Shown piece by piece: positions 113-24,960 of a DNA stretch of 64,000 nt. Both the position numbers and the translations under genes were made by a program. Within the stretch, counting starts at the first letter, position 1. Each line of letters opens with the position of its first letter. The DNA is from Bugula neritina. Lineage: Eukaryota; Animalia; Bryozoa. The DNA is taken from assembly GCA_964035545.1 (NCBI GenBank), contig OZ037773.1:4803751-4867750 (forward strand), given 5' to 3'. The notes under the pieces were generated by a model. The model had not been told where the DNA came from. It searched no databases and worked only from the letters and a program-made list of their open reading frames with translations.

Positions 113-248
113 CGTTGAATGACACATTCCACATTCTATGGGTCACGTCAAGGCCGTTTAAAAGACTACCATTAACCTCTAGAGTCTTGTTCAATGCCAT
201 GGCATACAGCAGTACTGCATCGTGAAATGCTCCAACAAAATAGTTCAC
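113..248 (-). CDS. NPR/receptor guanylyl cyclase-like gene, constant exon 4 (gene continues off the left edge)
   Basis: tag|GTG...AAC G|gtagg; translates VNYFVGAFHDAVLLYAMALNKTLEVNGSLLNGLDVTHRMWNVSFNG, a typical ANF-receptor extracellular motif; phase 0 start matches exon 3. Confidence 0.92.
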
Positions 249-605
249 CTACAGTTGGTATTAGAATGTAAAACTCTAATTCAAAAGACAAGAAAATAAT
301 CAAAATATTTCAAAATAATATAAAAAAAAAGATTCCCAGTAGTTACATGTAGAAGGTGATGTAAGCTAATGTTTTTTCAAGCCCTAATAAGCTACAATTT
401 ATTATATTCTCAACGCAAATGGCATATTGTTTTCAAATATAACTTGATCCATACAAATTATGTTTACATTTTTCAGAATTTATTTTATAGAAAATCTGCT
501 TAATTCCGTCATTATTTTACAAATTCTCAATACTTGATTACTTTTAAAATCAACATTTTTGAACATAGATATAGTTAGAGGCAACAGCTGGTTACACCAA
601 ACTAC

Positions 606-801
606 CTCTTCCTCAGCGTACTGCACATCAGGGAACTCTTCCTTTGCCTTCTCCTTCACTTCCTTTGAGAACTGAATGTATTGTTGGTTGTTGGGTGTCT
701 TCAGAGTTATGGTCAGCACCGACTTGAATGCCTCTTTGGTTTTTTCATTTTCTGCCAATGACTTTGTTGGGTCATACCAAGGCTTGGCCAATTCGTTTTT
801 T
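606..801 (-). CDS. NPR/receptor guanylyl cyclase-like gene, constant exon 3
   Basis: tgcag|A AAA AAC...GAA GAG|gtagt; KNELAKPWYDPTKSLAENEKTKEAFKSVLTITLKTP...YAEEE; 196 nt, phase 2 to 0. Confidence 0.92.
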
Positions 802-1758
802 CTGCAGCACACAAAAATATACATGGGAGATAACTACTACTCAAATATTACATTGAAATCAGTATAAAGTTAGTTTCAGTTAACAGTTTGCTGTGGCGTG
901 TAGGTGGAAAAAGTAACTTTTAAACTTTTGTCTACTAATAATCCTACCAGCTCCAACTCTATATTAAAGTAAGAGCTTTACTAAACTAATATTTCACATA
1001 ATATAACATTCAGTATAACTCAGCAGTCATTGTATATCACCAGGAAATGTCACATTATCAAGACAAAGTGTGTGCATAAAGCCTTGTTGCTAGACGTACA
1101 GTAAATCAGAAAGCCGTATTAAGTTATGCTTTTGTATGCAGCACATGATGCTATTAGCTAAATTAGGTTAATGTAATAGCATGGCTTTAGCGCAGTGCAA
1201 TATATTAAACTTACATTGCAATTACTAAATTAGCTTTAACAAATTAACAGTCATTTTCTCAAACCTTACATTTGGTAATAAGCTGATAGTAGGATTAGTC
1301 GCAGCCAATGAATTAGCCTGGTTTAATTTTATATAATATGACTTAACATCAGCTATATATATACTAAGGCTATATATATATACATTATAAGTGATAATTG
1401 GGTTGACACTTAATAAATTTTAATTGGTTTCATTATTTGTTTGTAAAATATCGGATTAAACTAATTATATTCTTCATGAATTCAGTCTGCATTGCAAACA
1501 TGTCAACTGCCATAGGCAGAGTTGCCACATTTCTATAAGCTGTCATATTTAAGAGCCAATGAATTATTTGAATATACTTTTTTGTCAATAAGTTATCAAG
1601 TTTTCCATTCAACTTAAATACATTGCATTACGTTATTTGTGAACCTTATATATATAGTGCAGGTATTTTTGGCTCTAAATAAAATCTTAAGATAGCCATA
1701 AACCTTTAAGAGGTTTTGAAGAGGCACACCTTTATTTACTGGAATGACACTTTTATAC

Positions 1759-1767
1759 TGCAGCAGT

Positions 1768-1798
<31 letters not shown>

Positions 1799-1801
1799 GC
1801 A
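1759..1801. repeat. (CAG)n microsatellite
   Basis: Imperfect gcagcagtagcagcagcagcaacagcag run. Confidence 0.9.
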
Positions 1802-2361
1802 CTGAAGAGTACAGTTGGTAATACAAGGAGAGTTATAATAACATATATGAGCCATACACCTACACGTAGACAAACAGACAGACAAACAAGCAGTTAGCGT
1901 AGGGCTACACAACGCTGGATTCCCGTGAGAGTACATATTGCAGGAGGGGGGTAAACCGTCCCGGAGCAACCTGCCAGCACAATGCGTGTGTTGTGAGTGT
2001 AAAATTTATTAGCTAATAATCTGGAAGCTTAAATTTACTGCTCGCCTACAGACAATTGTTTTTAAATCTACGTCATAGGCAAAGTGAATTATTATAAAAG
2101 CAAAAATGCAAACTATATAAAACTGTTTTAATGCAGTTCCCTAAAACCTAAAACGTCAACTGAAATAAAAAAATGTCCTCGCTAAATGGTGATCAGCTAA
2201 TTAAATAAAACTGCACAAGCTTTCTGCACTTGAGGCTCAGCATGTCATCTGCATGAAAATCCACACACTATAACACCCCATTTTCAGGCTAGACCAGTTC
2301 CCCTCCGCCACCCCCTGCACGTCACGCACGAGTAATCCGAGTGGTGTTGCTTATACCCACG

Positions 2362-2470
<109 letters not shown>

Positions 2471-3515
2471 CGCGTGTTTACGACATTGCTTTAGTGTTTT
2501 TATGCTGATTTTATAACTTTGATACAAGCATGGGTTGAACATGCCCACTTAACTGAAAGCTACAAACTAGCATTCTAAAATTTGACCTATAATGTATACT
2601 TCTATTGCAGCAGAAGTGGGCATGTACCATAAACATTATATAGCTTAGCATAGCATATAATTGGCAGTAAAATAATAATTGATAGAACTTAATGGCACAA
2701 TTGTCGAATTATCGAGATGCATATAAATATGAGATGTGCACAACAAACTATAATGGACGCAGCAGTTGAATACAGGTAGACACAGGTAGATACAAGTAGA
2801 TGCAGGTAGACACAGGTAGACACAGGTATTGTAGTAATGCATAATTACGGTGCAACAGAGCATATAGCCAAATTTCACCTGTAAAATTGTGATCTCGAAA
2901 CCTCTGATCATTACCCACTGATAAAGCGCCATTGACCAGTACTCCAAGGTCAATCACACCAACACTATCATAGTTACTATACACTGCACACAGTGTTTAT
3001 AATAAACCCTAGGTTTAATGCAGTATAGTTGAGAAGTTACTTATATTGTTATAGAACTCTCTTTTCTTCTTGACAATTTAGTGTCTTAAATGTTTACAGC
3101 GTGTAATCGAGTTGGTTTTTATTACTGCATGAATCAGAAGATGATTAGCAACTGTATGATGTCAACTTCTGTATATATATATAAGATGTGGATTTACAAA
3201 TAAAGATATAGTTTTTAGCCGTCAACCAAGTGTAGTCTTTTCAGTATAAATATAATACCTGCAGCTAACACAACATAAAAGACAATACCTAATTGCTGTG
3301 AAAAATTGTAAAGAAAAGATCTGTTTTGCTATATAAAAATTTATTTCCTGCAGGATGCAGTAAAATTATTTTTTTAATTAAAGATCAAATTTAGAGCTTT
3401 TCTATCATGGATATTAATTATCGATACCACACCTATACTGTTTACTGCACATTGGTGTATTTGCATTTATTCACTGTATGTAGCCTGTTATCTATTGATG
3501 TATGTAGCTGCTTAC

Positions 3516-3627
3516 CTGCCAAACATATCAATACTGAAGAACACATATTCTCCGTTAGTATAACCAAGGCTATGTGCAGAGAGCATTAGTTTTCTCATGG
3601 AATCCGGGCTTGCACACAGGAATATTA
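3516..3627 (-). CDS. NPR/receptor guanylyl cyclase-like gene, constant exon 2 (not in ORF track)
   Basis: ttttag|TA ATA TTC CTG TGT GCA AGC CCG...GGC AG|gtaagc; (I)IFLCASPDSMRKLMLSAHSLGYTNGEYVFFSIDMFG(R); 112 nt, phase 1 to 2, bridges exon 1 and exon 3 in frame. Confidence 0.93.
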
Positions 3628-3649
3628 CTAAAAGTGCAGAAAATACGTT

Positions 3650-3836
3650 AATGACATCACTGAACATTGTATTTATGACATCACTGAGTAATGCGTCTAT
3701 GACATCACTGAGTACTATATTGATGACATCACTAAGTACTATATTGATGACATCACTGAGTAGATACTGTATTTATGACACCACTGAGCACAGTATTTAT
3801 GACATCACTGAGCACTGTATTTATGACATCACTGAA
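3650..3836. repeat. ~21-nt minisatellite with TGACATCACTGA core, about 9 copies
   Basis: Repeated (t)atgacatcactgag units next to the exon 2 acceptor. Confidence 0.9.

Positions 3837-4742: not shown

Positions 4743-4747
<5 letters not shown>

Positions 4748-4800
<53 letters not shown>
4748..4800. repeat. (TA)n microsatellite
   Basis: Perfect TA run. Confidence 0.97.
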
Positions 4801-4802
<2 letters not shown>

Positions 4803-6280: not shown

Positions 6281-6410
6281 TTTATAACTTGAAGTTTATC
6301 AAAAAAGCAAAAAGTCACAATTAGAATAATTAGTTAAGAAAACCCTAATCATCCTGCTGCGAAACACGAATATTTATTCTCAAGTTTAAATTACAAAACA
6401 AAAAACTTAC

Positions 6411-7077
6411 TGCGAGTAGACAGTGAGGCTTCTAAAAGTAGTTTCGTGGCATTAAATTCTGTATTTTCATCAAACTTTCGTTTAAATGCCACATCCGGTT
6501 TGCCTGTGTATTCAATGATCATTTCTAGCATTGGCCACATGAGCATATAACATACACTCCGGGGTGTGCCTTCTGGATTTCCATGGTATATTAGTGCCAC
6601 ATTCGTCCAATTATACTTGATAAGGATGTGTTTGAATACTGTAGCTGCTTCAGAGTATTGCAGGCCTACTCTGGTTAATGTTTTGTATTCCGACTTTTCT
6701 GAGAAGCTTGTTTCTAGTGCACCGGCTGTTATTACTGGAATGTTCCAGTAAGCAGCGTACCTGGACACAGGTGCGATAGAGTATCCATACACAGGCCCTA
6801 AGAAGAGGTACACTGATCTGTAGATGTCTATGGCGGCTAGAGGCCCATGCACTTCTGAACGCTGAGAATCTCGAGATACTAGTTTTATGGTTAAATTTAG
6901 ACTCGCAAGTTTCTCTTTGTTTACTTTGGCGATTGCCATTTGGACGGCTGGCTTTACCTGACTCATGCTGTAGGAATAGTTGGCATCGTAAGGAAGCAGT
7001 AGCCCAATGGGAATGTCTTTTCCCAGCACACATTTTATGACAAGCAGAGAAACAACAAGCGTTGCCCAGGTTGCCAT
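6411..7077 (-). CDS. NPR-like first coding exon, variant 1a: signal peptide plus N-terminal ANF-receptor ligand-binding domain
   Basis: MATWATLVVSLLVIKCVLG signal; motifs GPLAAID, FLGPVYGYSIAPVSRYAAYWNIPVITAGA, EYKTLTRV; donor CGC A|gtaagt (phase 1). Confidence 0.92.
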
Positions 7078-10000
7078 CCTCAGCTCTGAAATATTATTGC
7101 GGAGTAATTCCTTAGGAGAGAAAGATCACTTACATGTAGCCTTCCCATAAGTCCCTTCTTTGTCCACTCAATAAGAGTAAAACGTCAACTATACCTCGCA
7201 CTTAGCCACAAGTTACTTAAGGCAAGTGTGTTTAAGCTGTGACTAACATATAATCTCGAGGTCATTGGCAGGGAGTAGTATAAGTGTACAGTGGTCAGTA
7301 ATTACTATGATAACAGTTTACTGCTCAATTGGTAACTCTACCAGCAGGCTAACACAGGCAGGCTGTGAGTTTCTATTTCTTAATTTATAGATTGTAGTTA
7401 TAGATCTAAAAACTATTCCGTTTTCTTCAAGTGCTGCGTGCAGGTCGTACGAAAATAAAGAATGGACTGATCAATAACACTGTGAAAAGGCATAGGGCTT
7501 CTATTGGCTAGATGTATAATAGTGTACTATCCATACATAATGAGATTGGATAACCAAGTAAGTTATTATCCACTACTTGAGTAAACTACCCACTGCTAAA
7601 AAAAGTTTTGCTTAAAACATTCAGTGTCATTTTCAAAATTTTAATTTTAAATAGAATTGCTTTCTATACTTAATTTCTCTTTGTAGAGTGCAAAAAGGTT
7701 GACTTGTAAAGGTGCAATTTAGGTTTGCAGCTTTGATTCTGCTAACTTAGGGAAGCAAGCTTTGAAATGGCCAATTAAGAACCAGTTTAATGCTTTGGTT
7801 TAAGTATGTATCAATTCTAATAGTTGTTCAATAGAGTTTCTCTAATATACTTCACCAGCTGCAACCTTCAACCTGCTATGTTACAATTGCGTTACATCTA
7901 CTTCTGGCAAATTAGCCAAACACCCTGCCTTGTTACAATCGCATGCACTACTGATACAACTAGATAACTACATGTGACCATTCTGTTAAATTTACTTTTG
8001 AAAAAATTAAACAACCTATACTGTAAAAATTATGCTACACGCACTTTTGATGCAAATAGCAAGCTGCATGTAATTAAGTTTATATGCTACATCCATTCCT
8101 GGTAGACATAGAAAACTGTGCGTATAATTACATTGTGCATGGTAATTACCAATTCACAAATACTTTGTTTGAGAGGCTTGTCATAATATTGATTATGAGG
8201 CAGATAATTGCATTATAATATAGCATTACCTCAGCATGATATATATGCCATAATACTCAATTCTGTTTTACTCTCTTCATACCAAGAAACACGGATATAC
8301 TTTGTTTTATATGTAGAGTTTATTAATTATTAAACTTATTTGACTCTACTTAATAATAATGTAATATTACTCTTATGCAATGTGTTCAATGGCCTTTATA
8401 CAGACGGTGAATGAGAAGACAACTTCTTGAATAAAATCGACCAATGAATTATTTTGAACATGCACTTGAATAGAGACAGAATTATTTTTTTAAATGTCTC
8501 GAAATCTAAGTGTGTAATATCAGTGTGTTAATATCAGTTGTCTTTAAAAACAGAAAGCAAGAAAATAATTTTGGGACTGATTTTATATCAAAGACCTCCT
8601 TTCTTTGCAACTCAAGTTCATAGAAAAAGCTGGTGATTGGATATTTACGAAACAGATATGTTTAAGATCAACTTTATGTAAATATTATCACATACCATTC
8701 TTTGTATTTTACAACACAAAAGGTGGTATACAGGAATGAGAGATTTATTGCTATGAAATTTACTAACAAAGGCTAGGGCACACTCATTAATTGCATAGTT
8801 TGTAAAATGCAACGGTATATATGGGAACTTTTATATTTCCTAATTGAAAAAGTGAGCATGACTCTGGGGAAGCAACTCCTTTCATTGAAAATATGCCTTT
8901 GCTAATGCAGTCTGTAAGACATATGAAACAAAATCTGGAAATATTTTAAAGGACTCATAGCCTTATAAAAAAATAACTAATACTATTGTTGACCCCAGAA
9001 ATGATATAAAATGATATGATATGAAATGCTATGGCATAACAAATTTTTCATATCATGCAGTAAAGTGCAAACAACCTGCTACCCGAACAGGACAAATCGG
9101 AGATAGGTGAGAATACTAATGTGCAAACAAATTAAAGCCCTATTGTTCAATCTATATTCATATTGGGAAATTTCTTTACATTCTCAACCCAGCAATAAAA
9201 CAAATGTAAACATGAATTATAACTACCACGTTATACGAAGAGAAGAGCTAGAATGATTTTTAAGCAAACTATTATAATGATAATCATTGTTATGTAATTG
9301 AGAAAAACTTTATTTGCAATAAATTTTTAATGCATGATTTCTTTTTTATATTTCGAAAAATGCAAAATAATTTGCACGGCATGCATACTACGACTTTAAA
9401 CATAATATATTTATTACAACGCTCTTTCCGTATATTTCGCCAAGCTGTAGGTTCCCACAACCTCAATTTGTGACACAGTAGAATACCTGATTTAACTCAT
9501 GGATTAGCTATACACACATACGTAAGCCCCAAAAGGAGGGTCCAAGCCTTTCTCGTGATTTATGAATTTGTGAGAAATGGAACCTTGAGATATGGAAGGA
9601 GCACTGTATATGTATTTATATGCAGTTTTATTAGTTCAGTTACATGACTTGTAATCTAATTATATTTGTGGTAGTTGAAAGTTTTCTAGACTCAGAATGG
9701 CAAGTTATAGTCATTGACAGCCATGATAGAACAACTACCACTTGTGTACAGCTTCACAATTGGTTGTCATGGGGACAGACAAACAATTGAAAAATGTGAA
9801 GTTTTGAGTTTTTAGCTTGCCAATATTAGAACTACTTTATGTGAATAAAATACTGGATAAATTAAACAAATTGTATTATGATAGTCACATTTTTTTCGAT
9901 TTATTAGCTTATTAGTATATCACACACAAAATATGTTGTGTTTAAAATGTTGGATTTATACACATTTTTACTCCTTAAAACTAACAAAAGTTAATATACA

Positions 10001-12869
10001 CATTTCAAAAAAGTATACTTTAATATTTTGCCATTTAGGTAATAAAACTTCTATATTCTATGACTAAGCGTCATCATGGAATTTGCTGCAGTGTGGGTGG
10101 TTATATATCTTATGCAAGGAATGCCTTAACTCATCAGCTGTAAATGTTAAAAAGAAAACTGCCAATATTAAACAGGATGTATAAAATTGTATAAAATAGA
10201 AAATTGCAAATGATAGACTCTGTTTTACAACTGCAACTGAAAATCTTTACAGTAGTTATCTCCTCTTTGTGGTATCCCTGTACTGCCTATAAGGAGATTG
10301 CTTGAGACTATCTCTAAGTTCGAAGCAATAAAACACATTCCTATAAAGCTATCTACTACCTATAAGCTTTCTTTATTGTTTACGTTATAAATTACATGCT
10401 GGCACTGCTAAACATAGAATAAAGAGAACAGAAAAACTCTATGACATTAAATAAGCTATTGGTTTTTACTAATTCTTACCAGCTGTTTACAAATTTTCAA
10501 ATTGCAAGTACGAGAATTACACGCTTATGACATTTCAACTGCAGTGCAGACACGTAAATTTTGCCATTTTTAACTATTGCTACTCTAAGTGCGTGGAAGG
10601 CAAATGGACTGCACTAATGCACCCATTAACACTGACTGCTTGTTTTATCTAAATATAGCATCTTGTAAATGTCATGCCTAAAGAGATAGAGAATTGCTTG
10701 AAGTGCATAGAACAGATTTTTACCCTGCTTTGCCCGAATTTTTACAGGACTTGATACCTTCATTAAAAAATGTGTATCAAAGCATATTTAAGTACTTTTA
10801 TATAAGCTTTCAAATTTAATAAGTGATCGAACCAAAAAAGCATCAACAATGCTAAAGACAATAGAAAGAATATTGATATTAATGATGATATTAATAATGT
10901 CTCATATGTTCACAGTAAATAAATGTAGAATCAAGTGAAATAAAGTGACATAGCTTGTCTTCCCCAACTGTGAAAAAGATTTGGATTAAACTATGCAAAT
11001 AAAAGCTACTATAATATATTACTATGTGCGGAAAGCTGACAGAGAATATACACAGGCTAAAATATAGTGGGATTTCTCAATACTGACTAACTAAATCAAA
11101 TATTATAATGAATGATAATGACAAACCGATAACATGTTTATAGTATAGCCAGCTGGTGACAGCAAAATGTATGGAAAAAGAATGACATTCGGTAACTATC
11201 TTAAGAAAACTAAGAAGACATTGAAAATGATGAGACTGGAAGTATTTTAATACGCATGAAACATTCCAGAAACTCAGATATAAAACAGGAAATGGGAGCA
11301 ATAGAACTCTTTGTTTCATTATTGTCTAGAAAAGGTACTACCAGGTCACTTTAGGTTAAGAGCTGAAATGCTGAGTAATGAGAAATAATATTACTAAAGT
11401 CTATTTAGCTACAGCTCTTAGGCTGCATAGCTATGTGCAGTAAGATTTTCTAGTACTTATTGACTAATCAAATTGAAGTATAAATGTAGACACAAATAAT
11501 ACTGTTAGGGTTCAGTTATCAGCCAGAAAACACCTTAAACTAATATGCTTATTATAGTTCAGTAATACTGTTTATTAACTGGATAAACCAGAATACTCAT
11601 TATAATATGTATTGCCTGGGCTAGCTAGAAATAATATTATTCTCGTAATAATTTCATAACTTTGAGCGTAGCTACTGCTTTGTAGTATAATAGTATCTAA
11701 CTATTCTTTAGCAAGCACATCCACTGGTCAATTAATAAGTTAAATTACCCATAATCCATCATGAAATGAGTTGTAACTATTTGCAACTATCAAATGTTTT
11801 CAAAGAAAATTTCTTTGCAAAATTTAAAATGTGGCATCATCCATAATTGAAAATGATTTCAGCCTCTCTTATGTATAAAAAAATTTCTTAAGACAATTAA
11901 ACGTTTTATTACAAAATAAAATAACAATTTTATGAAAAATTTAGCAAAAAATGAAGCAAGTATAACTTTTTATTGCTGCATAACTTTGAAAGTCAATGTT
12001 TGATCTCAGCTAAAAATACAGGCAAATTCCAACCTATGGTCATACAGCTGTAATGACTCTAACTGCAGTGTGGTACTTTTCTTACATCATCAGTATTAGT
12101 AATTAATTGTAAGTATTAAATGATGTTTTCTGCATTCTATTAAATTATTAAGAAATATCGTTGCCTGTTTTATTCAGCTGTGAAACTCTTTCATGGCTGT
12201 TTATTTTGTCAAACTTCAAACTCTTAAGCTGATTGATTATTTTTAGAAACTAATGGAGAACTATATTTAACAAATTAGGGCATTTGAAATAGCTCCAGGA
12301 GCCTTCACCAAATTTCTTACAGTTAGTCTTTTAATTCCAACATAGTTTATGGTCATTCAACCTGAGTTTGCTAACGAAAGAGAGCAATTATTAGCAATGC
12401 CATTTTCTGCTCCGTGACCAAATTTGTAGTAATACTGCAGGTTTAAAAGTTGAAATTACCTCAAATACTGTTGTACTCAGCTTATTAAGTACCATTAGCT
12501 AAGTCATTTACTGGCTGTGTCAATAGCCATTGTAGTTTTATACAGTTGACATCATAAACCAATTATCAGCAAATGATGGTTGCATGTTAGTTTAATTATT
12601 TTAGTAGCACCCAGGCTATACATATGGGTGGTGGGAGAGCTCTTTTTACTGCCTGTAGAAAAGAAATATAACTGATAAACTCATTCTTTCTTCTGCACAC
12701 TACCAAGTTTAAAATGAAAACTTTGAGTAATAATAATTAAAATTATGACAAAAAAAGTAACGCTATGTTAAATAAATGAAATATTTTAGCTAAGTGTTAT
12801 CAAGTATATTGATGATTAATATTTTTTGTGCTAAAAAAGAATTTCAATGAGTAGAGTATAGTATTAAAA

Positions 12870-13008
12870 CAAATTGGTGATATTAAGAAGAGCATCCAGT
12901 TATAATTGCTCCTGTGCCACATATGAAAAATTCCTTAGCCCGATTTAACAAAAACCTCTTTCATTAGGGGCTTCTCACAGAAATGGTGACTGTAAACTTG
13001 CACGTGAG
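12870..13008 (+). mobile_element. 5'-truncated SINE copy (duplicated at ~21075-21211)
   Basis: aagagcatccagt...ttccttagcccgatttaac...atggtgactgtaaacttg shared with 52900-53025. Confidence 0.75.
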
Positions 13009-14256
13009 CTTTGTTATGAACATTTGAGTTAGATGAATTTGCTATCATACATCGTCTCAATTTAAGTCAGCATTCAATTATGTAATATAGGCAGATTGTT
13101 TCAGCGTGAAGTTTGTCTTCCTTCATTAGTATTCAAATGATGGCCCAAAGTTGCCAATAGCCTTGGAAACAAATGTGAACAAAGTCTTAAACGTCTGTAG
13201 ACATATATCGGCTAATGTGTTATGCTTGTAAGATGTGTCAAAAATTGATTAAGAGACGCAAGTAATGTCCAGTGCCTGATAATGATTTTAATATTTTGAA
13301 TTAATTAGTTAAGATGATGTAAACACCATTAGCTGACAGATCCTATTTTCTTGTATTACTACATATTAACAGCAGTCTAGAAAACATAGCTTTACTTCAA
13401 AGTAACTTGCTTACTTTGAAGTATCAGTGTACATCAGTTAAAAAGAAATAAGAGAAGCTGAATTGCAAATAATTGTAAGATTAAAGAGAAATTATGCAGA
13501 TAATACAAATACTGTTTTGTACTGTCGTTTATGAACCACAGCAGCAAATTACTAAAGAACACTTAAAACAGTCACTTTTTATCTTTACTTTACAAGTCTT
13601 TAAAAAGGTTTAGGTTATTTCCATCTAGCAATAAGCAAAGATACAAACAGAAACAGTATAAGCAATGCTAATTGTGCATCACCCATACTTAAAGAGCGAT
13701 CAATATTGTGATATGATTTGTCACAACTTTCTACTACTATTCTATTTTTTATTCCAAGTAAAAGGCTAAGATATGAGTTATTTTTCTATAAAATTTGCTT
13801 TATATTTCTAAATGAACCCAGATGATATGCAATATTTAAGTATATATATTATCTAACATCTGCTCATTATTATCAAGTTGAGATCTGCATATCTAAATGA
13901 AAATATGCAAAATTAAACTTATTACTTTGCTTAATGGCGTTTTTATGTTAGTTTGTTCTAATTAAGTACAAAGGCATCACAAGTACCTCTAGTGTCACAA
14001 ATGTCAGAAGCTAATGTCAGAAATGTTTAGAAGTAACAAGAAAGGTCACGCGCCTATTTTAGAACGTTTAGAAAACAAAAAAGCTCACCTATTCACTTTG
14101 CATCATTGCATTATTCTAATGAGCCTATATATGTTTCTCCCAACATTAAAGTCACTATAGATCACTTGGTCCTCAGGCATGCAAGTATTCAAGTCCAAAT
14201 ACTTTTAAATTTAGCCCCAAGTGTATATATGTTGGAAGATAATTTACTTTACTTAC

Positions 14257-14980
14257 TTGCAAAATCATTTCCAATTTTCTTTTCCATAAAACTTTCAACA
14301 CTTTTGTACTTTCCAGTATTGTTGAACATGCTCGTTTCGAGTGGAGTTATTTCTGTATAAATATTTCCATATTTCTTCTTAAACTGCTTATATATAGCGT
14401 TAAATGCTAAATAGCAAAATTCGGAAGACACGTAATCCTGGCCCTGCTTGTCGAATAAAAGCAATAACCTGTTCCAGCGAAAATGTTCGGCAACGCTTTT
14501 GATGGTGTCACTCATGCTGAGAAAATGTGACAGCACTCTGGTTAGAGTCTTGTATTCCTTCACACCAGTATTCTTTTCAGCGAAACCCTCGGCCAGGCCT
14601 CCGGTAGTGATAACTGGTTTATTCCAGACTGTGGAGTATCGGGCTACGGGAGCGAGGCTGTAGTCACAACACGGACCAAAGAAGACATCAGAAACATTGT
14701 TAATGTAATAGCCAAATGCTGCCAATGGCGCTCCTACACCATCACATTGGGAGTTGCTGTACTGAAATTTAAATTGTACCTTATCTCTGCTAATAATGCC
14801 TTTTTCATATGCCGATTCAAATCCAAGTCTTATTGCTGGTACGCACTTGTCTATAGAGAACAAATAACTTGCGTTTGTAGGCAGAATAATTGCAACATTG
14901 ACTGTAGTCGGCTCATTCCCAAAACTCAAACCTGTGAGATAAGCAGCTGTGATAATGATGCCGATGCCGTTGGCAAACAT
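14257..14980 (-). CDS. NPR-like first coding exon, variant 1b
   Basis: ATG in GCTGCCATG context (ORF track starts upstream at a TTG); hydrophobic signal; FFGPCCDYSLAPVARYSTVWNKPVITTGG, EYKTLTRV; donor GCA A|gtaagt (phase 1). Confidence 0.88.
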
Positions 14981-16763
14981 GGCAGCACGTAACGCAATCT
15001 CCTCCAAACAGCGATCAAAATTCGATAAAAATTTCTGCGTGTAGATAAAGCGTATTCTAAAGTTCAGCAGCTACTGGTTTGAAGACCATTACCTTTATGG
15101 TTTCGTGTTGCATAATAGATCCCAGTGAAGCTATTATATCCGATACAATTAGTCATTTAGCTTATGAATTGTTAGAGTGCTGCCTATTTATTGCTTCCAC
15201 CTTGATAAGAGGGTTCATAATACCTCTTTGCCTTGTTTCTTATCCGGTTGTTGAAAGCTCTCTGAGCTAATCTTGGACTTCACAAGTGCCTGTCACAAAG
15301 TTTTATTCCAGCAATATAGATAAGAAATCCCACTTGAACGAAATATTTACTGTTATTCACTTACTGTTAAATAACTATAGTAATTATCTTCAGTCACAAG
15401 TATATATAGTCATTCAACTTATTGAATATTATTTAAACGAAGATGATAGGCCGGTGTAGCATCTCTATCAGTTTCCAGGTGCTAAATGCTGTACTCATAC
15501 CTTCTTCTTACACTCAAATCAGTACAGCTCCAAGTTTTATTGTTTGTATACAACATAAATGCCTTAACCTTTCACACTGGAGCTTTGTAAGACTGCTGCC
15601 ATTGCTGCCGTTTACAATCTTTGTGCATCTGTAATACCGCTACTTGTTCGTCTACTTTCACTGACTGCTCGAGAGAAAAACCAACTTGGAAGTTGAAGCC
15701 TATCCAACTCTTTCTAATTATTTTCAAGTATAATAAGTTGTAAATGCAGTATAGACTACTTGTATGCGCTTATCTTTACATGCGTGCCAGTGGCAAATAC
15801 TATTATTGGACAACAAACTTTGTAATAGAACCTCATATTGATCGAAGTATTGATAGCAGTGAAATGTAAAACTAATAGCAATGTAAAACTAATGTAGAAG
15901 TAATGCTCTATGTTTGCAAACTGCAAATATTGCGAGCTGCTTGTGCTGCAAATACATATGCTGTAAATGTTTGTAGGAAATAAAATTGGATCCATGATAT
16001 CGATAGTAGACAATATAAATATGCCTATCTTTTACTTTGAATATTACCACCATACCAATACACTGTGTAATGTTACATGTTGTAGCAACATTGTGTTTAC
16101 TGAATAAAATATACGCATTGAGATATATACTATATAGGAAAAATATATTATATGAAAATGTACAATTATATGAACTAAAACATGCCTAACATAGCCACAG
16201 CATATGACTGGAAGCAGGTTATTAACATTTGAATTTTGCTTTAGATTTATCATATTGCATAAACTATCAGAAAAATTCGTCAATTCCAGCTTTTGTTATA
16301 GTTAATTCAACAAGGAAAAATTCATTACATACATGTACTAGGCTTATTGGCCAACTTAATGGGCTACGCACACACACACACACACACACGCGCATGCACA
16401 TATAATATACTACATGAATTTTTCACATAAAAGCAAATTTTTCTGTTTGTATGATTTTAGGAATTTTTTTCAGTAGCCAGTGCAAAATCTGTCCTATGCT
16501 ACAAAGCTAATTGAAGGCCATACAAGTGCAAGCAAAACTTGTTTATACAACTAGGCTAGCTTTGCTGTAACTTGAAGGATTGCTAAGTTAAATGAGTATT
16601 GCTTTGTTTGAACTATGGCTAAAGATAAGCATTATTTGCTGCTGTTAAGCCAAATATTCTATTACCTAGTCAATTAATGGATTATTATAATGTTATTCAG
16701 AGAAATGTTAAGTAGCAAGAGAAGACAACTATAAATAATAATAAGAATTCACATTCACATAAT

Positions 16764-19700
16764 TTAAGTGTGTAAATGTTAAGTCTTTAATATCAGTTGT
16801 CTTTAAAAACAGAAAGCAAGAAAATAATTTCGGGACTGATTTAATATCGAAGACCTCATATCTTTGCAACTCAAATTTACAGAAAAAGTTGGTGGTTGAA
16901 TATTTACAAAACAGATATGTTTAACATCAACTTTATGTAAACATTATATACCTTTCTTTGTATTTTACAACACAAAAAGTGGTATAGAGGAATGAGAGAT
17001 TTAAATTGCTATGAAAGGCTAGGGCACATTCATTAATTGCATAGTTTGTAAAACGCAACAGTATATGGAGACATTCGTATTTCCTAATGGAAAAAAGCAT
17101 AACTCTAGAAAAGACAACTCCCCTCACTGAAAACCTGCCTTTGCTATTGCAGTCTGTAAGACATATGAAACAAAATCTGGAAATATTTTAAAGAACTCAT
17201 AGCCTTATATAAAGATAACTAATACTATTGTTGACCCCAGAAATGATATAAAATGATATGATATGAAATGCTATGGCATAACAAATTATTCATACCATGC
17301 AGTAAAATGCACAACAAATTAAAACCTTATATTATTTTATAATTTATATTCATATTGGGCAACTTCTTTACATCTATAAGTCAACAATAAAACAAATGTA
17401 AGCATTTCCTAACAAGCAATGCAATGCAATACACATGAATTACAATTACCACATTGTACGTACAGAGAAGAGTTGAAATAGCAAACTATTATAACGATAA
17501 TTGTAGATGTAGTGGAGAGAAACTCCATTTGCAATAAATTTCCAATGTATTATTGCTTTTTTGCATTTAAAAGGGCAGAATAAATTGCAGGCATGCATAT
17601 TTCAACTCTAAACATAAATTTATAACACTGCCTCCATATCTCACTAAGCTACGGTCCAAAGCCTCTATTTGTGACATAGTAGAATACCAGATTTAACTCA
17701 TGGATCAGTTAAATTTGGCCATTTTGTTCCCATACACATACAGCTACAATATGGGGGTCCAAAACTCATTCATGGACTATTTATTATGTGTTTTGTCTGA
17801 CGAGTGTGTGGCTGGTCATAATGAGAGGATAACTCACGACAATATTCACACGAATTTGTGTGATTCTCATGAGCTTGAGGCCAGCCAGGCCTTTAGAATA
17901 ACAAATCATAATCACTAACAGGAATGATAAGACAACTACCATTTGTGTATAACTTCATAATTGGTTGTCATGGGAACAGAGATACAATAGGAAATGTGGA
18001 ATCTTGAGTTTTCAGCATGCTAGCGTTAGAACTACTTTATGTGAATAAAATACTTGATAAATTAAACAACTTGTATTTTTAGTTACAGTTTTTTTAATTT
18101 ATATTAAAGCTATTTTTATCACAAAAAAACATATTGTGTCTAAAATGTTGAATGTATACACATTTTTACACCCTAAAACTGACAACAGTTGATATATATG
18201 CATATTTAAAAAAAAAATGTATTTATTATTTTTTGCAATTGGATGATTGAGGTAATAAAACTTCTTTGCTATGGCTAAGTGTCATCATGGAATTTGCTAC
18301 GGTGTGCGTGGTATATCTTATGCAAGGAAAGCCTTAACTTATCAGCTATAAATGTTAAAAAGAAAACTGCCAATATTAAACAGGATGTATAAAATTGTAT
18401 AAAATAGAAAATTGCAAATGATAGACTCTGTTTTACAACTGCAACTGAAAATCTTTACAGTAGTTATCTCCTCTTTGTGGTATCCCTGTACTGCCTATAA
18501 GGAGATTGCTTGAGACTATCTCTAAGTTCGAAGCAATAAAACACATTCCTATAAAGCTATCTACTACCTATGAGCTCTCTTCATTGTTTACGTTATAAAT
18601 TATATGCTGGCACTGCTAAACATAGAATAAAGAGAACAGAGGAACTCTATGACATTAAATAAGCTATTGGTTTTCACTAATTCTTACCAGCTGTTTACGA
18701 ATTTTCAAACTACAAGTACGAGAATTACATGCTTATGACATTTCAACTGCAGTGCAGACCGTAAATTTTGCAAGTTTTAACTATTGCTACTCTAAGTGCG
18801 TGGAAAGCAAATGGACTGCGCTAATGCACCCATTAACACTGACTGCTTGTTTTATCTAAATATAGCATCTTGTAAATGTCATGCCTAAAGAGATAGAAAA
18901 TTGCTTGAGGTGCATAGAACAGATTTTTACCCTGCTTTGCCCGAATTTTTACAGGACTTGATACCTTCATTAAAAAATGTGTATCAAAGCATATTTAAGT
19001 ACTTTTATATAAGCTTTCAAATTTAATAAGTGATCGAACCAAAAAAGCATCAACAATGCTAAAGACAATAGAAAGAATATTGATATTAATGATGATATTA
19101 ATAATGTCTCATATGTTCACAGTAAATAAATGTAGAATCAAGTGAAATAAAGTGACATAGCTTGTCTTCCCCAACTGTGAAAAAGATTTGGATTAAACTA
19201 TGCAAATAAAAGCTACTATAATATATTACTATGTGCGGAAAGCTGACAGAGAATATACACAGGCTAAAATATAGTGGGATTTCTCAATACTGACTAACTA
19301 AATCAAATATTATAATGAATGATAATGACAAACCGATAACATGTTTATAGTATAGCCAGCTGGTGACAGCAAAATGTATGGAAAAAGAATGACATTCGGT
19401 AACTATCTTAAGAAAACTAAGAAGACATTGAAAATGATGAGACTGGAAGTATTTTAATACGCATGAAACATTCCAGAAACTCAGATATAAAACAGGAAAT
19501 GGGAGCAATAGAACTCTTTGTTTCATTATTGTCTAGAAAAGGTACTACCAGGTCACCTTAGGTTAAGAGCTGAAATGCTGAGTAATGAGAAATAATATTA
19601 CTAAAGTCTATTTAGCTACAGCTCTTAGGCTGCATAGCTATGTGCAGTAAGATTTTCTAGTACTTATTGACTAATCAAATTGAAGTATAAATGTAGACAC

Positions 19701-22700
19701 AAATAATACTGTTAGGGTTCAGTTATCAGCCAGAAAACACCTTAAACTAATATGCTTATTATAGTTCAGTAATACTGTTTATTAACTGGATAAACCAGAA
19801 TACTCATTATAATATGTATTGCCTGGGCTAGCTAGAAATAATATTATTCTCGTAATAATTTCATAACTTTGAGCGTAGCTACTGCTTTGTAGTATAATAG
19901 TATCTAACTATTCTTTAGCAAGCACATCCACTGGTCAATTAATAAGTTAAATTACCCATAATCCATCATGAAATGAGTTGTAACTATTTGCAACTATCAA
20001 ATGTTTTCAAAGAAAATTTCTTTGCAAAATTTAAAATGTGGCATCATCCATAATTGAAAATGATTTCAGCCTCTCTTATGTATAAAAAATATTTTTAGGA
20101 CAATTATACGTTTTATTACAAAATAAAATATAAATTTTATGAAAAATTTAGCAAAATATGAAGCAAGTATAATTTTTTATTGCTGCATAACTTTGAAAGT
20201 TAATCTTTGATCTCAACTAAATGTACAAGCAACTTCCAACCTACGGTCATACAGCTGTAATGACTGTAATTGCAGTGTGGTACTCTTTTTACATCATCAG
20301 TATTAGTAATTAATTGTAAGTATTAAATGATGTTTTCTGCATTCTAAAACTATTAAGAAATCGTTGCCTGTTTTATCCAGCTGTGAAACTCTTTCATGGC
20401 TGCTTATTTTATCAAACTTCAAAACTCTTAAGCTAATTGATTATTTTTAGAAATTAATGGAGAACTATATTTAACAAATTAAGGCATTTAAAATAGCTCC
20501 AGGAGCCTTCACCAAATTTCTTACAGTTAGTCTTTTAATTCCGCCATAGTTGATGGTCATTCAACCCGAGTTTGCTATAACGAAATGAGAGTAATCATTA
20601 GCTATGCTATTTTCTGCTCCGTGACCAAATTTGTAGTAATATTGCAGGTTTAGAAGTTGAAATTACCTCAAATACTGTTGCACTCAGCTTATTAAACACT
20701 ATTAGGTAAGTCATTTACTGGCTGTGTCAATAGCCATTGTAGTTTTGTATTGTTGACATCGTAAACCAATTATCAGCAAATGATGGTTGCATGCTAGTTT
20801 AATTATTTTAGTAGCACCCAGGCTATACATATGGGTGGTGGAAGAGCTCTTTTTACTGCCTGTAGAACGAAAATACTAATAAACTCATTCTTTTTTCTGC
20901 ACACTACCAAGTTTAAAATGGAAACTATGAGTAAAAATAATTAAAATTATGACAAAAAAGTAACGCTATGTTAAATAACTAAAATATTTTAGCTACCTGT
21001 TATTGAGGATATTGAGAATTAATATGTTTTATGCTAAAAAAGAATTTCAATGGGTAAAGTATAGTATTAAAACAAATTGGTAATGTTAGAAAGAGCATCA
21101 AGTTATAATTGCTCCTGTGCCACATATGAATAAGTCTTTAGCCCGATTTAACAAAAACCCCTTTCATCAAGGGCTTCTCACAGGAATGGTGACTGTAAAC
21201 TTGCACGTGAGCTTTTTATGAACATTTGAGTTAGATTAATTTGCTATCATACACCGCCTCAATTTAAGTCAGCATTCAATTATCTAATATAGGCAGATTT
21301 TTTCAGCGTGAAATTTGTGTCTTTCTTCATTAGTATTCAAATGATGGCCCAAAGCTGCCAATAGCCTTGCAAAACAAATTTGAACAAAGTCTTAAACGCA
21401 TGTTGACATATATCAGCTAATGTGTTATGCTTGTAGGATGTGTCAAAAATTGATTAAGGGGACTCAAGTAATGTCCAGTGCCTGATAATGATTTTAATAT
21501 TTTGAATTAAGTAGTTAAGATGATGTGAACACCATTAACTGAACAGATCATATTTTCTTGTATTACTACATATAATTAAAAGCAGTCTAGAAAACATAGC
21601 TTTACTTCAAAGTGACTTGCTTACTTTAAAGTATCAATGTACATCAGTTAAACAGAAATAAGAAAAGCTGGATTGCAAATAATTGTAAGATTAAAGAGAA
21701 ATTATGCAGATAATACAAATACTGTTTTATGCTGTCGTTGATGAACGACAGCAGCAAATTACTAAAGGACACTTAAAACAGTCACTTTTTATCTTTACTT
21801 TACAAGTTTTTGAAAGGGTTTAGGTTATTTCCATTTAGCAATAAGCTAAGATACAAACAGAAACAGTATAAGCAATGCTAATTGTGCATCACCAATACTT
21901 AAAGAGCTCAATATTGTGATATGATTTGTCACAACTTTCTACTACTATTCTATTTTTTATTCCAAGTAAAAGGCTAAGATATGAGTTATTTTTCTATAAA
22001 ATTTGCTTTATATTTCTAAATGAGCCCAGATGATATGCAATATGTAGGTATATATATAATCTAAAATCTGCTCATTATTATCAAGTTGAGATCTGCATAT
22101 CTAAAGAAAAATATGCAAAATTAAACTTATTGCTTTGCTTAATGGCGATTTTATGTTAGTTTGTTCTAATTAAGTACAAAGGCATCACAAGTACCTCTAG
22201 TGTCACAAATGTCAGAAGTTAATGTCAGAAATGTTTAGAAGTAACAAGAAAGGTCACGCGCCTATTTTAGAACGTTTAGAAAGCAAAAAAAGCTCACCTA
22301 TTCACTTTGCATTATTGCATTATTTCAATGAGCCTATATATGTTTCTCCCAACATTAAAGTCACTATAGATCACTTGGTCCTCAGGCATGCAAGTATTCA
22401 AGTCCAAATACTTTTAAATTTAGCTCCACGTGTATATATGTTTGAAGATAATTTACTTTACTTACTTGCAAAATCATTTCCAACTTTCTTCTCCATAAAA
22501 CTTTCAACACTTTTGTACTTTCCAGTATTGTTGAACATGCTCGTTTCCAGTGGAGTTATTTCTGTATAAATATCTCCATATTCCCTCTTAAACCGCTTAT
22601 ATATAGCGTTAAATGCTAAATAGCAAAATTCGGAAGACACGTAATCCTGGCCCTTCGAGTCGAATAAAAGCAATAACCTGTTCCAGTGAAAATGTTCGGC

Positions 22701-24960
22701 AACGCTTTTGATGGTGTCACTCATGCTGAGAAAATGTGACAGCACTCTGGTTAAAGTCTTGTATTCCTTCACACCAGTATTCTTTTCAGCGAAATCCTCG
22801 GCCAGGCCTCCGGTAGTGATAACTGGTTTATTCCAGACTGTGGAGTATCGGGCTACGGGAGCGAGGCTGTAGTCACAACACGGACCAAAGAAGACATCAG
22901 AAACATTGTTGATGTAATAGCCAAATGCTGCCAATGGCGCTCCTACACCATTGCATTGGGAGTTGCTGTACTGAAATTTAAATTGTACCTTATCTCTGCT
23001 AATAATGCCTTTTTCATATGCCGATTCAAATCCAAGTCTTATTGCTGGTACGCACTTGTCTATAGAGAACAAATAACTTGTGTTTGTAGGCAGAATAATT
23101 GCAACATTGACTGTAGTCAGCTCATTCCCAAAACTCAAACCTGTGAGATAAGCAGCTATGATAATGATGCCGATGCCGTTGGCAAACATGGCAGCACGTA
23201 ACGCAATCTCCTCCAAACAGCGATCAAACCTCGATAAAAATTTTTGCGTGTAGATAAAGCGTATTCTAAAGTTCAGCAGCTACTGGTTTGAAGACCTTTA
23301 TGGTTTCGTGTTGCATAATAGATCCCAGTGAAGCTATTATATCCGATACAATTAGTCATTTAGCTTATGAATTGTTAAAGTGCTGCCTATTTATTGCTTC
23401 CACCTTGATAGGAGGGTTCATAATACCTCTTTGCCTTGTTTCTTATCCGGTTGTTGAAAGCTCTCTGAGCTAATCTTGGACTTCACAAGTGCCTGTCACA
23501 AAGTTTTATTCTAGCAATATAGATAAGAAATCCCACTTGAACGAAATATTTACTGTTATTCACTTACCATTGAATAACTATAGTAATTATCATCAATCAC
23601 ACAAGTATATATAGTCATTCAACTTATTGAATATTATTTAAATGAAGATGATAGGCCGGTGTAGCATCTCTATCAGTTTCCAGGTGCTAAATGCTGTACT
23701 TATACCTTCTTCTTACACTCAAATCAGTACAGCTCCAAGTTTTATTGTTTGTATACAACATAAATGCCTTAACCTTTCACACTGAAGCTTTGTAAGACTG
23801 CTGCCATTGCTGCCGTTTACAATCTTTGTGCATCTGTAATACCGCTACTTGTTCGTCTACTTTCACTGACTGCTCGAGAGAAAAACCAACTTGGAAGTTG
23901 AAGCCTATCCAACTCTTTCTAATTATTTTCAAGTATAATAAGTTGTAAATGCGGTAGACTACTTGTAAGCGCTTATCTTTACATGCATGCCAGTGGCAAA
24001 TACTATTATTGGACAACAAACTTTGTAATAGAACCTTATATTGATCGAAGTATTGATAGCAGTGAATTGTAAAACTAATAGCAATGTAAAACTAATGTAG
24101 AAGTAATGCTCTATGTTTACAAACTGCAAATATTGCTGCTTGTGCTGCAAATATATATGCTGTAAATGTTTGTAGGAAATAGATATGGATCCATGATATC
24201 AATAGTAGACAATATAATACATATGCCTATATTTTACTTTGAATATTACCACCATATACCAATACACTGTGTAATGTTACATGTTGTAGCAACAATGTGT
24301 TTATACTGAATAAAATATACATGCACATTAAGGTATACTACATAGGAAAATATATTATATGAAAATGTACAATTATATGAACTAAAACATGCTTAAAATA
24401 GCCACAGCAAATGACTGGAAGCCGATGATTAAAATTTGAATTTTGCATTATATTTATCATATTATTGCATAAATTATCAGAAAAATTTGTCAAGTCCAGC
24501 TTTTGTTATAGTTAATTCAACGAGGAAAAATTCATTACATACATGTACTAGGCTTATTGGCTAACTTAATGGGCTACACATGCACGCACGCACATATAAT
24601 ATATTACATGAATTTTTCACAAAAAGCAAATTTTTCTGTTTGTATGATTTTATGAATTTTTGTCAGCATAGCCAGTTCAAAATTTGTCCTATGCTATAAC
24701 AAAGCTAACTGAGGGCCATACAAGTGCAAGCAAAACTTGTTTATACAACTAGGCTAGCTTTGCCGTAACTTGAAGGATTGCTAAGTTATATGAGTATTGC
24801 TTTGTTTGAACTATATGGCTAAAGTTAAGCATTATATTTTGCTGCTGTTAAACTAAATATTCCATTACATAGTCAATTAGTGGATTATTATGAGAAATGT
24901 TAAGTAGCAAGAGAAGACAACTTTAAATAATAATAAGAATACTTAATGGCATTCACATAA
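16764..24960. repeat. Tandem segmental duplication, unit 2 (~8.2 kb)
   Basis: Starts taagtgtgtaa...aatatcagttgtctttaaaaacagaaagcaag like 8507; ends cattcacataa like 16762. Confidence 0.93.
22466..23189 (-). CDS. NPR-like first coding exon, variant 1c (recent duplicate of 1b)
   Basis: 724 nt like 1b, intact frame, about 19 nt differences, same phase-1 donor. Confidence 0.85.

What the first reader, a model, noticed from the sequence alone, without database searches (positions are those of the whole stretch)
113..23189. Variable first-exon cassette array on a natriuretic-peptide-receptor/guanylyl-cyclase-type gene (protocadherin/UGT1-like architecture)
Seen: three large exons (6411-7077, 14257-14980, 22466-23189), each with its own ATG, signal peptide and N-terminal ~220-240 aa of an ANF-receptor ligand-binding domain, all ending in the same phase-1 donor (A|GTAAGT). 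I found only one exon 2 (3516-3627, phase-1 acceptor) and one each of exons 3 and 4; no CASP/GEYVFF-type exon was visible between the variable exons. Exon 1a is deeply diverged from 1b/1c, and the recent 8.2 kb duplication copied only upstream sequence, exon and intron. Known: clustered protocadherins and UGT1A splice alternative first exons to constant exons, and NPR-type receptors bind ligand as dimers. Inference: one locus makes receptors with interchangeable ligand-binding heads on a shared body, possibly as combinatorial heterodimers, and the array is still expanding. I do not know of this being described for this receptor family.
Basis: partly seen in the sequence, partly recalled or inferred. 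Interest (0 to 1): 0.92.

Follow-up and report, generated by a model that had tools for sequence, protein, structure and literature searches.

The report
Receptor guanylyl cyclase with alternative heads
One invertebrate hormone-receptor (guanylyl cyclase) gene carries three interchangeable first exons, each encoding a different front half of its ligand-binding domain; this is real, but the same design is already known in the worm gene gcy-28 and annotated in many molluscs.

Summary
On the minus strand lie three first coding exons ("heads": 1a 6411-7077, 1b 14257-14980, 1c 22466-23189). Each has an ATG, a hydrophobic N-terminus and the N-terminal half of an ANF-receptor domain, and each ends in the phase-1 donor A|GTAAGT. 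Downstream there is one set of body exons: exon 2 3516-3627, exon 3 606-801, exon 4 113-248, then kinase-homology and cyclase exons up to 12.6 kb left of the window. Profile searches find exactly three heads and no private exons 2-6. 1b and 1c are an 8.2 kb head-to-tail duplicate.

No RNA data could be reached; the only run holding the exon is DNA. Splicing of 1b/1c to exon 2 is therefore inferred from four results:
- The 1b/1c head is under purifying selection against a related organism (dN/dS 0.14-0.17, donor conserved).
- In 14 RefSeq isoform pairs from 10 mollusc species and a horseshoe crab, homologous genes swap exactly this head at the same phase-1 junction on a 100% identical body.
- 1a and 1b/1c fall into separate, old head types shared with those species.
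- C. elegans gcy-28 isoforms c and d do the same from separate promoters in different cells.

Verdict: a new member of a known kind. The heterodimer idea is untested, and the 1b/1c duplication could not be excluded as a haplotype artefact. The only earlier scan note bearing on this lies on this same window.

The parts
22466..23189 (-). Head exon 1c (coding part): ATG, hydrophobic N-terminus, N-terminal half of the ANF-receptor domain, phase-1 donor A|GTAAGT at 22466/22465
   Evidence: dN/dS 0.17 against the relative L006
23190..24940 (-). About 1.7 kb upstream of head 1c, conserved 88-97% with a related organism, more than the downstream intron (81-87%); inferred private promoter/5'UTR region
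   Evidence: the equivalent block upstream of 1b is 97-98% identical to it. The function is inferred, not shown.
16761..24940 (.). Tandem duplication unit 2 (upstream block, head 1c, about 5.7 kb of intron)
8503..16748 (.). Tandem duplication unit 1 (upstream block, head 1b, about 5.7 kb of intron); abuts unit 2 with no N
14257..14980 (-). Head exon 1b (coding part), 94% identical in protein to 1c; phase-1 donor A|GTAAGT
6411..7077 (-). Head exon 1a (coding part), the 'type A' head, 30-31% identical to 1b/1c; phase-1 donor A|GTAAGT
3516..3627 (-). Shared exon 2 (phase-1 acceptor TTTTAG|, encodes IFLCASPD...GEYVFF); the only such exon in the region
606..801 (-). Shared exon 3 of the ligand-binding domain
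113..248 (-). Shared exon 4 of the ligand-binding domain. The gene continues left of the window: exons 5-6 at about -786..-1520, kinase-homology from about -6817, cyclase from about -10718 to -12645

Best explanation
This is one membrane receptor guanylyl cyclase gene of the NPR1-like / gcy-28-like group. It has three alternative first coding exons and one shared body.

Inferred mechanism: transcription starts at one of the heads, each from its own upstream region. The head's donor then joins the single exon 2 acceptor at 3627, and any head lying downstream is removed as intron because a first exon has no acceptor of its own.

Each choice gives a receptor with a different signal peptide and a different N-terminal ~220-240 aa of the ligand-binding domain. 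The rest of that domain, the membrane span, the kinase-homology domain and the cyclase are identical. The likely result is a different ligand or dimer specificity in different cells.

1a is an old 'type A' head and 1b/1c an old 'type B' head. 1b and 1c arose by a recent 8.2 kb tandem duplication.

Shown here: the exons, their shared phase, the single body, the constraint on the 1b/1c head, and homology to genes that make such isoforms. Inferred: promoter use, the splice itself in this organism, and any functional difference between heads.
For: - Exons, domains and donors.
- A single body, with kinase-homology and cyclase exons only downstream of 1a.
- No hidden exons 2-6 and exactly three heads.
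- The 1b/1c head against a related organism's contig (L006) gives dS 0.24-0.27, dN 0.04 and dN/dS 0.14-0.17. There are no indels in the exon, whereas the introns are full of them. The donor is conserved.
- The upstream 1.7 kb is better conserved than the intron.
- The body is 52-56% identical to mollusc and annelid NPR1-like receptors.
- In 14 RefSeq isoform pairs (Mercenaria, Argopecten, Ostrea, Saccostrea, three Haliotis species, Mya, Biomphalaria, Tachypleus) the first ~240 aa are 20-50% identical and the rest is 100% identical. The switch lies 3-5 residues before the Cys of the CASPD motif. The junction residue is I or V, as a phase-1 split codon predicts. This is the same junction as here.
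- In the head tree, 1a groups with one isoform head of each mollusc (support 100/100), and 1b/1c sit in the other clade (100/100).
- C. elegans GCY-28 canonical and isoform d differ only in the first ~290/265 aa, up to the CASPD motif. They are cloned with different forward primers and the same reverse primer, and driven by separate promoters in different cells (PMC9249223).
- All heads keep the Cys that should pair with the exon 2 Cys.
Against: - No transcript evidence for this organism. The single public run holding the exon is DNA: its contigs cover the introns.
- Between 1b and 1c, dN/dS is 0.75 on only 19 changes, and the 1c branch has 7 nonsynonymous changes to 1 synonymous. One copy may be drifting.
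- RefSeq isoforms are computed models. I could not inspect their RNA support or their loci: searches found no record, and the gene was too long.
- Promoters are inferred from conservation only.
Confidence: 0.8

Rival explanations
1. 1b and 1c are orphan relics of a partial gene duplication: exons that are no longer used, or never spliced to the body. The gene then makes only the 1a form.
For: No RNA evidence. dN/dS between 1b and 1c is 0.75. There are no private downstream exons.
Against: dN/dS is 0.14-0.17 at dS of about 0.25 against a related organism. The ORF is intact, with no indels, while the flanks have many. The GTAAGT donor and the upstream block are conserved. The 1b/1c type is as old as the split from molluscs and is used as an isoform head there.
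Confidence: 0.07
2. 1b and 1c are not two paralogous exons but two haplotypes of one exon, wrongly laid in tandem by the assembler. The locus would then have two heads (1a and one type-B head), and nothing would be 'still expanding'.
For: The units are collinear over their full length and abut exactly. Contigs of the one DNA run are mosaics of 1b and 1c letters, and their depths do not settle the copy number.
Against: There is no N or gap at the junction or anywhere else in the window. Divergence of 5-7% with many indels, and only 64-90% identity in the first 1.3 kb of the unit, is high for alleles. The assembly is chromosome-scale, 216 Mb in 321 contigs.
Confidence: 0.12
3. Heads 1b and 1c are small stand-alone genes. 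Each would make a secreted ~243 aa half-domain that ends two codons into the 'intron' (...DFASK stop).
For: The ORF closes two codons after the donor. Purifying selection alone would fit this reading too.
Against: The head is only about the first third of the Pfam domain model (positions 2-131 of 353). It leaves unpaired a Cys whose expected partner lies in exon 2. The phase-1 GTAAGT donor is conserved in the relative and lies at the junction used by homologous isoforms.
Confidence: 0.03

Closest known systems
C. elegans gcy-28 (receptor guanylyl cyclase, NPR-like), isoforms c and d
   Same: Two alternative 5' coding parts give N-terminal ~290 or ~265 aa that are only 19-44% identical. Both join an identical body just before the CASPD...GEYVF motif. 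They have separate promoters and different cell types, broad versus AIA interneurons (PMC9249223).
   Different: Two heads are compared here for the worm, three in this window, and one of the three was recently duplicated. The worm heads are too diverged to assign to the A and B types. I did not see the worm exon structure itself. The original papers (Tsunozaki 2008, Shinkai 2011) are not held.
RefSeq 'atrial natriuretic peptide receptor 1-like' isoforms X1-X8 of molluscs and horseshoe crab
   Same: Same gene family: the body is 52-56% identical. The switch point and phase-1 junction are the same. The head types are orthologous.
   Different: Those are computed models from public annotation, with up to at least 7-8 isoforms per gene by their names. 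This window is unannotated DNA with three heads. I found no paper that describes the arrays.
Clustered protocadherins and UGT1A (multiple variable first exons)
   Same: A tandem row of first exons, each presumably with its own promoter. Each is spliced to one set of constant exons, and the row grows by tandem duplication of exon plus upstream region.
   Different: Those variable exons encode a whole self-contained module: the entire ectodomain plus membrane span, or the whole substrate-binding domain. Here the variable exon encodes only part of one bilobed fold, so each head must pack against, and probably disulfide-bond to, the shared remainder. Stochastic promoter choice, CTCF sites and a conserved promoter element were not tested. 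The families are unrelated.
Vertebrate NPR1/NPR2/NPR3
   Same: Same domain order (ANF-receptor domain, membrane span, kinase-homology, cyclase) and the same motifs (GPxC, APVAR, CxSPD, EYVFF).
   Different: As far as I know, vertebrates get ligand diversity from separate genes, not from alternative heads on one gene. This rests on general knowledge and was not tested here.

Membership tests
NPR-like receptor guanylyl cyclase | Extracellular ANF-receptor (PF01094) ligand-binding domain | tested here: met
   The heads hit PF01094 at E 4e-24 to 6e-14. Exons 2-6 supply the rest of the domain.
NPR-like receptor guanylyl cyclase | Kinase-homology domain followed by a class III cyclase domain on the same strand downstream | tested here: met
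   PF00211 exons lie at C9:4791930-4793122, minus strand. tblastn with full-length homologs aligns kinase-homology and cyclase exons in order at window -6817 to -12645.
NPR-like receptor guanylyl cyclase | Single membrane span between the ectodomain and the kinase-homology domain | tested here: inconclusive
   The ORF at -1625..-1248 matches the part of my profile that includes the homologs' membrane segment. No membrane-span prediction was run.
Gene with multiple variable first exons (protocadherin/UGT1 type of architecture) | Two or more tandem 5' exons, each with its own start codon and a donor in one common phase | tested here: met
   Three heads, all with A|GTAAGT in phase 1.
Gene with multiple variable first exons (protocadherin/UGT1 type of architecture) | One shared set of constant exons and no private copies | tested here: met
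Gene with multiple variable first exons (protocadherin/UGT1 type of architecture) | A separate promoter/TSS in front of each variable exon | not testable with these tools
   Only indirect evidence: a conserved 1.7 kb upstream block. No CAGE or RNA data were available.
Gene with multiple variable first exons (protocadherin/UGT1 type of architecture) | Transcripts that join each variable exon to the first constant exon | not testable with these tools
   The only run holding the exon is DNA. The feature is met in homologous genes by annotation and by worm cDNAs.
gcy-28 / NPR1-like genes with alternative heads | Head-to-body junction 3-5 residues before the Cys of CASPD, with a phase-1 split codon | tested here: met
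   Window junctions read ...STR|I-IFLCASPD and ...DFA|I-IFLCASPD. The junction is the same in 14 isoform pairs and in worm GCY-28.
gcy-28 / NPR1-like genes with alternative heads | Heads orthologous to the head types of other species | tested here: met
   1a falls in the type-A clade (support 100/100). 1b/1c fall in the other clade (100/100), with the sister relation to the Mercenaria X2 / Octopus type supported at only 85/81.

The most novel reading that the evidence does not exclude
The NPR1-like/gcy-28-like receptor cyclase locus is an ancient 'variable-head' receptor cluster of protostomes, possibly reaching amphioxus. It would keep several orthologous head types (type A plus several type B) for hundreds of millions of years and still gain heads by local duplication. 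Cell-specific promoter choice would then give one cyclase body many ligand specificities, and perhaps mixed dimers. This system sits in public annotation and has been used as a promoter tool in worms, but I found no description of it as a cluster.
Probability: 0.35. Interest if true: 0.6.

Novelty: new member of a known kind. Interest (0 to 1): 0.4.

Why it matters
The window adds a clean, compact example of about 36 kb: three heads and one body, with a fresh duplication caught in the act. The design lets one signalling enzyme carry different ligand-binding fronts.

The broader point comes from the comparison, not from this locus alone. The same junction and the same old head types recur in molluscs, a horseshoe crab and a nematode. 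Several public gene models (Limulus, Lingula, amphioxus) appear to string alternative heads together into one impossible protein. That matters for annotation, and for anyone seeking the unknown ligands of invertebrate NPR-like receptors, because each head may define a separate receptor. As a discovery it is modest, since the principle is already established for gcy-28.

Tried and rejected
- **RNA evidence.** The look-up of sequencing runs with exon 1b returned one run of unknown kind. Laying it on 9301-15300 showed contigs over the introns, so it is DNA. It gave no junctions and no usable copy-number answer.
- **Close relatives in metagenomes.** The scan with head 1b returned only distant heads, at most 45% identical over the whole head. 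The age of the duplication in the relative, and a second copy there, could not be checked.
- **Loci of the isoform genes.** Mercenaria, Argopecten and Mya isoforms are not on record. The Haliotis rubra gene spans 320 kb and no DNA was served. So I did not see the mollusc head arrays at DNA level.
- **Limulus locus.** L009 is a paralogue, not the orthologue, of the Tachypleus isoform genes.
- **Literature.** Searches for variable or alternative first exons in receptor cyclases found nothing specific. One search was badly posed. Tsunozaki 2008 and Shinkai 2011 are not held.
- **Considered and dropped.** A diverged private exon 2 hidden in the introns was rejected by the profile search. Further heads up to the window's right end or 40 kb to the left were rejected.
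Full report
**What is there**

The window is G000:C9:4803751-4867750 of a 216 Mb eukaryotic assembly with about 33% G+C. On the minus strand, three stretches translate without stops:
- 6411-7077 (222 codons)
- 14257-14980 (241 codons)
- 22466-23189 (241 codons)

Each starts with ATG and a hydrophobic N-terminus. Each matches the first third of the Pfam ANF_receptor model (positions 2-131 of 353) at E 4e-24, 5e-15 and 6e-14. Each ends ...A|GTAAGT with one base of the next codon, that is, in phase 1.

Exon 2 at 3516-3627 follows a TTTTAG acceptor. With that extra base it reads I-IFLCASPD...GEYVFFSIDMFG.

Reading the sequence against homologs gives exon 3 at 606-801 and exon 4 at 113-248. I call the three first exons heads 1a, 1b and 1c.

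**The rest of the gene**

I fetched 40 kb to the left of the window. Full-length homologs then align in order. Two more ectodomain exons lie at about -786..-917 and -1344..-1520. Kinase-homology exons start at about -6817, and cyclase exons run from about -10718 to -12645.

A six-frame scan of the whole genome with PF00211 puts cyclase exons at C9:4791930-4793122 on the minus strand and nowhere else near. This is therefore one complete receptor guanylyl cyclase body, lying downstream of 1a.

Its exons are 52-56% identical to NPR1-like receptors of bivalves, gastropods and Capitella. The organism is probably a lophotrochozoan; I did not identify it further.

**Only one body**

- tblastn with the exon 2 peptide finds 3518-3628 and otherwise only noise.
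- The genome-wide PF01094 scan at E up to 10 lists, on this part of C9, only the three heads and body exons.
- I built a profile of the post-head ectodomain from six homologs and searched every stop-to-stop ORF from -3000 to 34000. Five ORFs scored E 1e-11 to 1e-18, which are exons 2-6, each found once. The next best hit had E=3.2.
- A head profile finds exactly three heads in the 104 kb examined.

**The duplication**

Unit 8503-16748 and unit 16761-24940 are head-to-tail copies that abut without any N.

| Part of the unit | Identity between the copies |
|---|---|
| First 1.3 kb | 64-90% |
| Most of the intron | 93-94% |
| About 10700-11900 | about 100% |
| Exon and the 1.7 kb upstream of it | 97-98% |

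The exon has 19 substitutions and no indel. The flanks have 4.75% substitutions and 127 gap columns. Each unit holds about 1.8 kb of upstream sequence, the head and about 5.7 kb of intron, and nothing else recognisable.

**Is the 1b/1c head a living exon?**

A library search with 1b found a 243 aa ORF, 92% identical, on a 7.3 kb JGI contig. That contig, L006, aligns to the 1c unit and to its unique upstream flank at about 86% DNA identity. It therefore comes from a related organism.

Against it, the head shows dS 0.24-0.27 but dN 0.04, so dN/dS is 0.14-0.17. There are no indels, and the GCAA|GTAAGT donor is conserved. The 1.7 kb upstream is 88-97% identical, while the intron downstream is only 81-87%.

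The head is therefore translated and constrained, and its upstream block is constrained too.

Between 1b and 1c, dN/dS is 0.75 on 19 changes. Polarised with L006, 1b has 4 synonymous and 6 nonsynonymous changes, and 1c has 1 and 7. These numbers are too few to say whether one copy is drifting or diversifying.

**Direct RNA evidence**

None could be obtained. The single run that holds exon 1b (86% of sampled words) is DNA: its contigs cover the introns and show no splice joints.

Its variant letters match the 1c unit at 33 of 39 listed places, and the contig over the exon is a 1b/1c mosaic. Both versions are thus present in that sample. I cannot tell paralogues from haplotypes with this evidence.

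**What other genomes show**

Most of the 985 library hits to 1b at E up to 0.001 are ORFs of 230-300 aa that stop just after a ...[FY][AGS] end. They are the same first exon, read into its intron.

Several annotated proteins contain two or three heads in a row: Limulus XP_022238773.1, Lingula XP_013400522.1 and Branchiostoma lanceolatum CAH1254748.1. At DNA level:
- The Limulus locus has two heads 4.2 kb apart, followed by one body.
- The amphioxus locus has four heads at 2.5-3 kb spacing.
- The Lingula locus has two heads 22 kb apart.

Those gene models most likely string alternative first exons together.

**The telling comparison**

A search with the body of a full-length homolog returned many RefSeq entries named isoform X1 to X8 of 'atrial natriuretic peptide receptor 1-like'.

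I compared isoforms within species in Mercenaria, Argopecten, Crassostrea angulata, Ostrea, Saccostrea, Haliotis rufescens, H. rubra, H. cracherodii, Mya, Biomphalaria and Tachypleus. They are 20-50% identical over the first ~240 aa and 100% identical afterwards.

In the 14 pairs checked, the switch lies 3-5 residues before the Cys of the CASPD-type motif. The residue at the joint is I or V. That is what a phase-1 split codon gives when the head supplies A or G.

The window has this same junction: 1a ...STR|I-IFLCASPD and 1b ...DFA|I-IFLCASPD.

**Head types**

I built a maximum-likelihood tree of 50 heads. It puts 1a in a clade (support 100/100) with one head from each mollusc gene, Capitella and the Tachypleus heads. 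1b, 1c and L006 sit in the other clade (100/100), next to unnamed ORFs from other organisms. With weaker support (85/81) they are sister to the Mercenaria X2 / Octopus type.

Type A heads end ...SLxxR, and type B heads end ...VGxx[FY]x. The split between 1a and 1b/1c is therefore older than the split between this organism and molluscs. The multi-head state is inherited, not a local accident.

**The experimental precedent**

C. elegans GCY-28 (1276 aa) and its UniProt isoform d (1238 aa) are 19-44% identical over the first ~290/265 aa. They are identical from just before CASPDTVREIM...GEYVFI onward, apart from a 13 aa internal cassette.

PMC9249223 clones the two cDNAs with different forward primers and one reverse primer. 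It uses a 3.2 kb gcy-28.c promoter (broad expression) and a 2.9 kb gcy-28.d promoter (AIA interneurons). It states that the isoforms are expressed in different cells, citing earlier work.

Alternative heads on an NPR-like cyclase, each with its own promoter, are thus established knowledge. I found no paper that treats them as a conserved multi-head cluster.

**Mechanism proposed**

*Shown:* three heads in one phase, one acceptor, one body, constraint on the heads, and homology to genes that make such isoforms.

*Inferred:* each head has its own promoter in the conserved block upstream. The transcript's first donor joins exon 2, and downstream heads, which lack acceptors, go out with the intron.

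The resulting proteins differ in the membrane-distal part of the binding domain.

The alignment confirms this. 1a has R and Y where most heads have the SxC and GPxC cysteines, as do Mercenaria X3 and both worm heads. All heads keep the later C[YF] cysteine. That the partner is the exon 2 Cys is taken from what I recall of NPR-A structures, not tested here.

Different ligand or dimer specificity per head is a reasonable expectation. Mixed dimers are speculation.

**Rivals**

- Orphan relic exons: unlikely, given the constraint and the conserved donor.
- Head-only secreted proteins: unlikely, given the partial fold, the unpaired Cys and the conserved splice junction.
- A haplotype artefact that makes one type-B head look like two: not excluded. 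I put it at about 0.12. It would remove the 'still expanding' claim but not the alternative-head architecture.

**Verdict**

The core interpretation is very probably right, though unproven by RNA in this organism. The novelty claim is not right. This is a new member of a known kind, with some added value from the cross-phylum comparison.

Noticed in passing
window 3651-3835: A 24-nt unit repeated 7.5 times (82% matches), consensus ATGACATCACTGAGCACTGTATTT. On the gene strand it contains TGATGTCAT, which resembles a CRE/AP-1-like half-palindrome. It lies in the intron about 25 nt upstream of the shared exon 2 acceptor.
   Followed up: partly
window 10700-11900 vs 18900-20100: About 1.2 kb of the two duplication units is practically 100% identical, while neighbouring intron is 93-94%. 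This suggests gene conversion or a young insertion shared by both units.
   Followed up: no
window 12701-13100: This intron stretch has k-mer depth above 100,000 in the DNA run, against about 150-300 around it, with many loose ends. It is a very high-copy repeat.
   Followed up: no
window 54715-55707 and 58119-59165, minus strand: Two neighbouring intronless ORFs (330 and 348 aa) of the rhodopsin-type 7TM receptor family (PF00001, E 9e-17 and 3e-14). They are clearly paralogous.
   Followed up: partly
window 60085-63340, plus strand: A Ty3/gypsy-like retroelement. One 877 aa ORF carries the integrase zinc finger and core before the reverse transcriptase and RNase H, which is an unusual order. 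A 225 aa ORF with no Pfam hit precedes it.
   Followed up: partly
window 43628-44935, minus strand; repeats near 39829-39966 and 45447-45584: A 435 aa ORF without any Pfam hit lies between two stretches that translate to identical peptides about 5.6 kb apart. This may be an LTR-flanked element.
   Followed up: no
window 50053-50355, plus strand: A 100 aa ORF (50053-50355) gives a weak, sub-threshold Aminotran_3 match (PF00202, E 5.5e-4, 19.2 bits against a cut-off of 30.5). It is possibly an exon of a class-III aminotransferase-like gene, unrelated to the receptor. A nearby ORF at 48562-48846 has no Pfam hit.
   Followed up: no
G000:C5:2024162-2062411 (minus) and G000:C2:15666539-15701089 (plus): Two other regions show periodic repeats of the same ANF-receptor profile segments every ~10-16 kb, with no cyclase exons nearby. 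They may be tandem genes of another ANF-domain family, or further cassette arrays.
   Followed up: no
L009 (Limulus) 10142-14885; L008 (Branchiostoma lanceolatum) 7648-16151; L007 (Lingula) 10022-32681: Public gene models XP_022238773.1, CAH1254748.1 ('NPR3') and XP_013400522.1 contain two or three heads in series. At DNA level these are tandem first-exon-like heads: two, four and two. The models are probably mis-joined alternative first exons.
   Followed up: partly
heads of many species (alignment): Two head classes can be told apart by their last residues. Type A ends ...SLxxR. Type B ends ...VGxx[FY][AGS]. Both worm GCY-28 heads end in the type A manner.
   Followed up: partly
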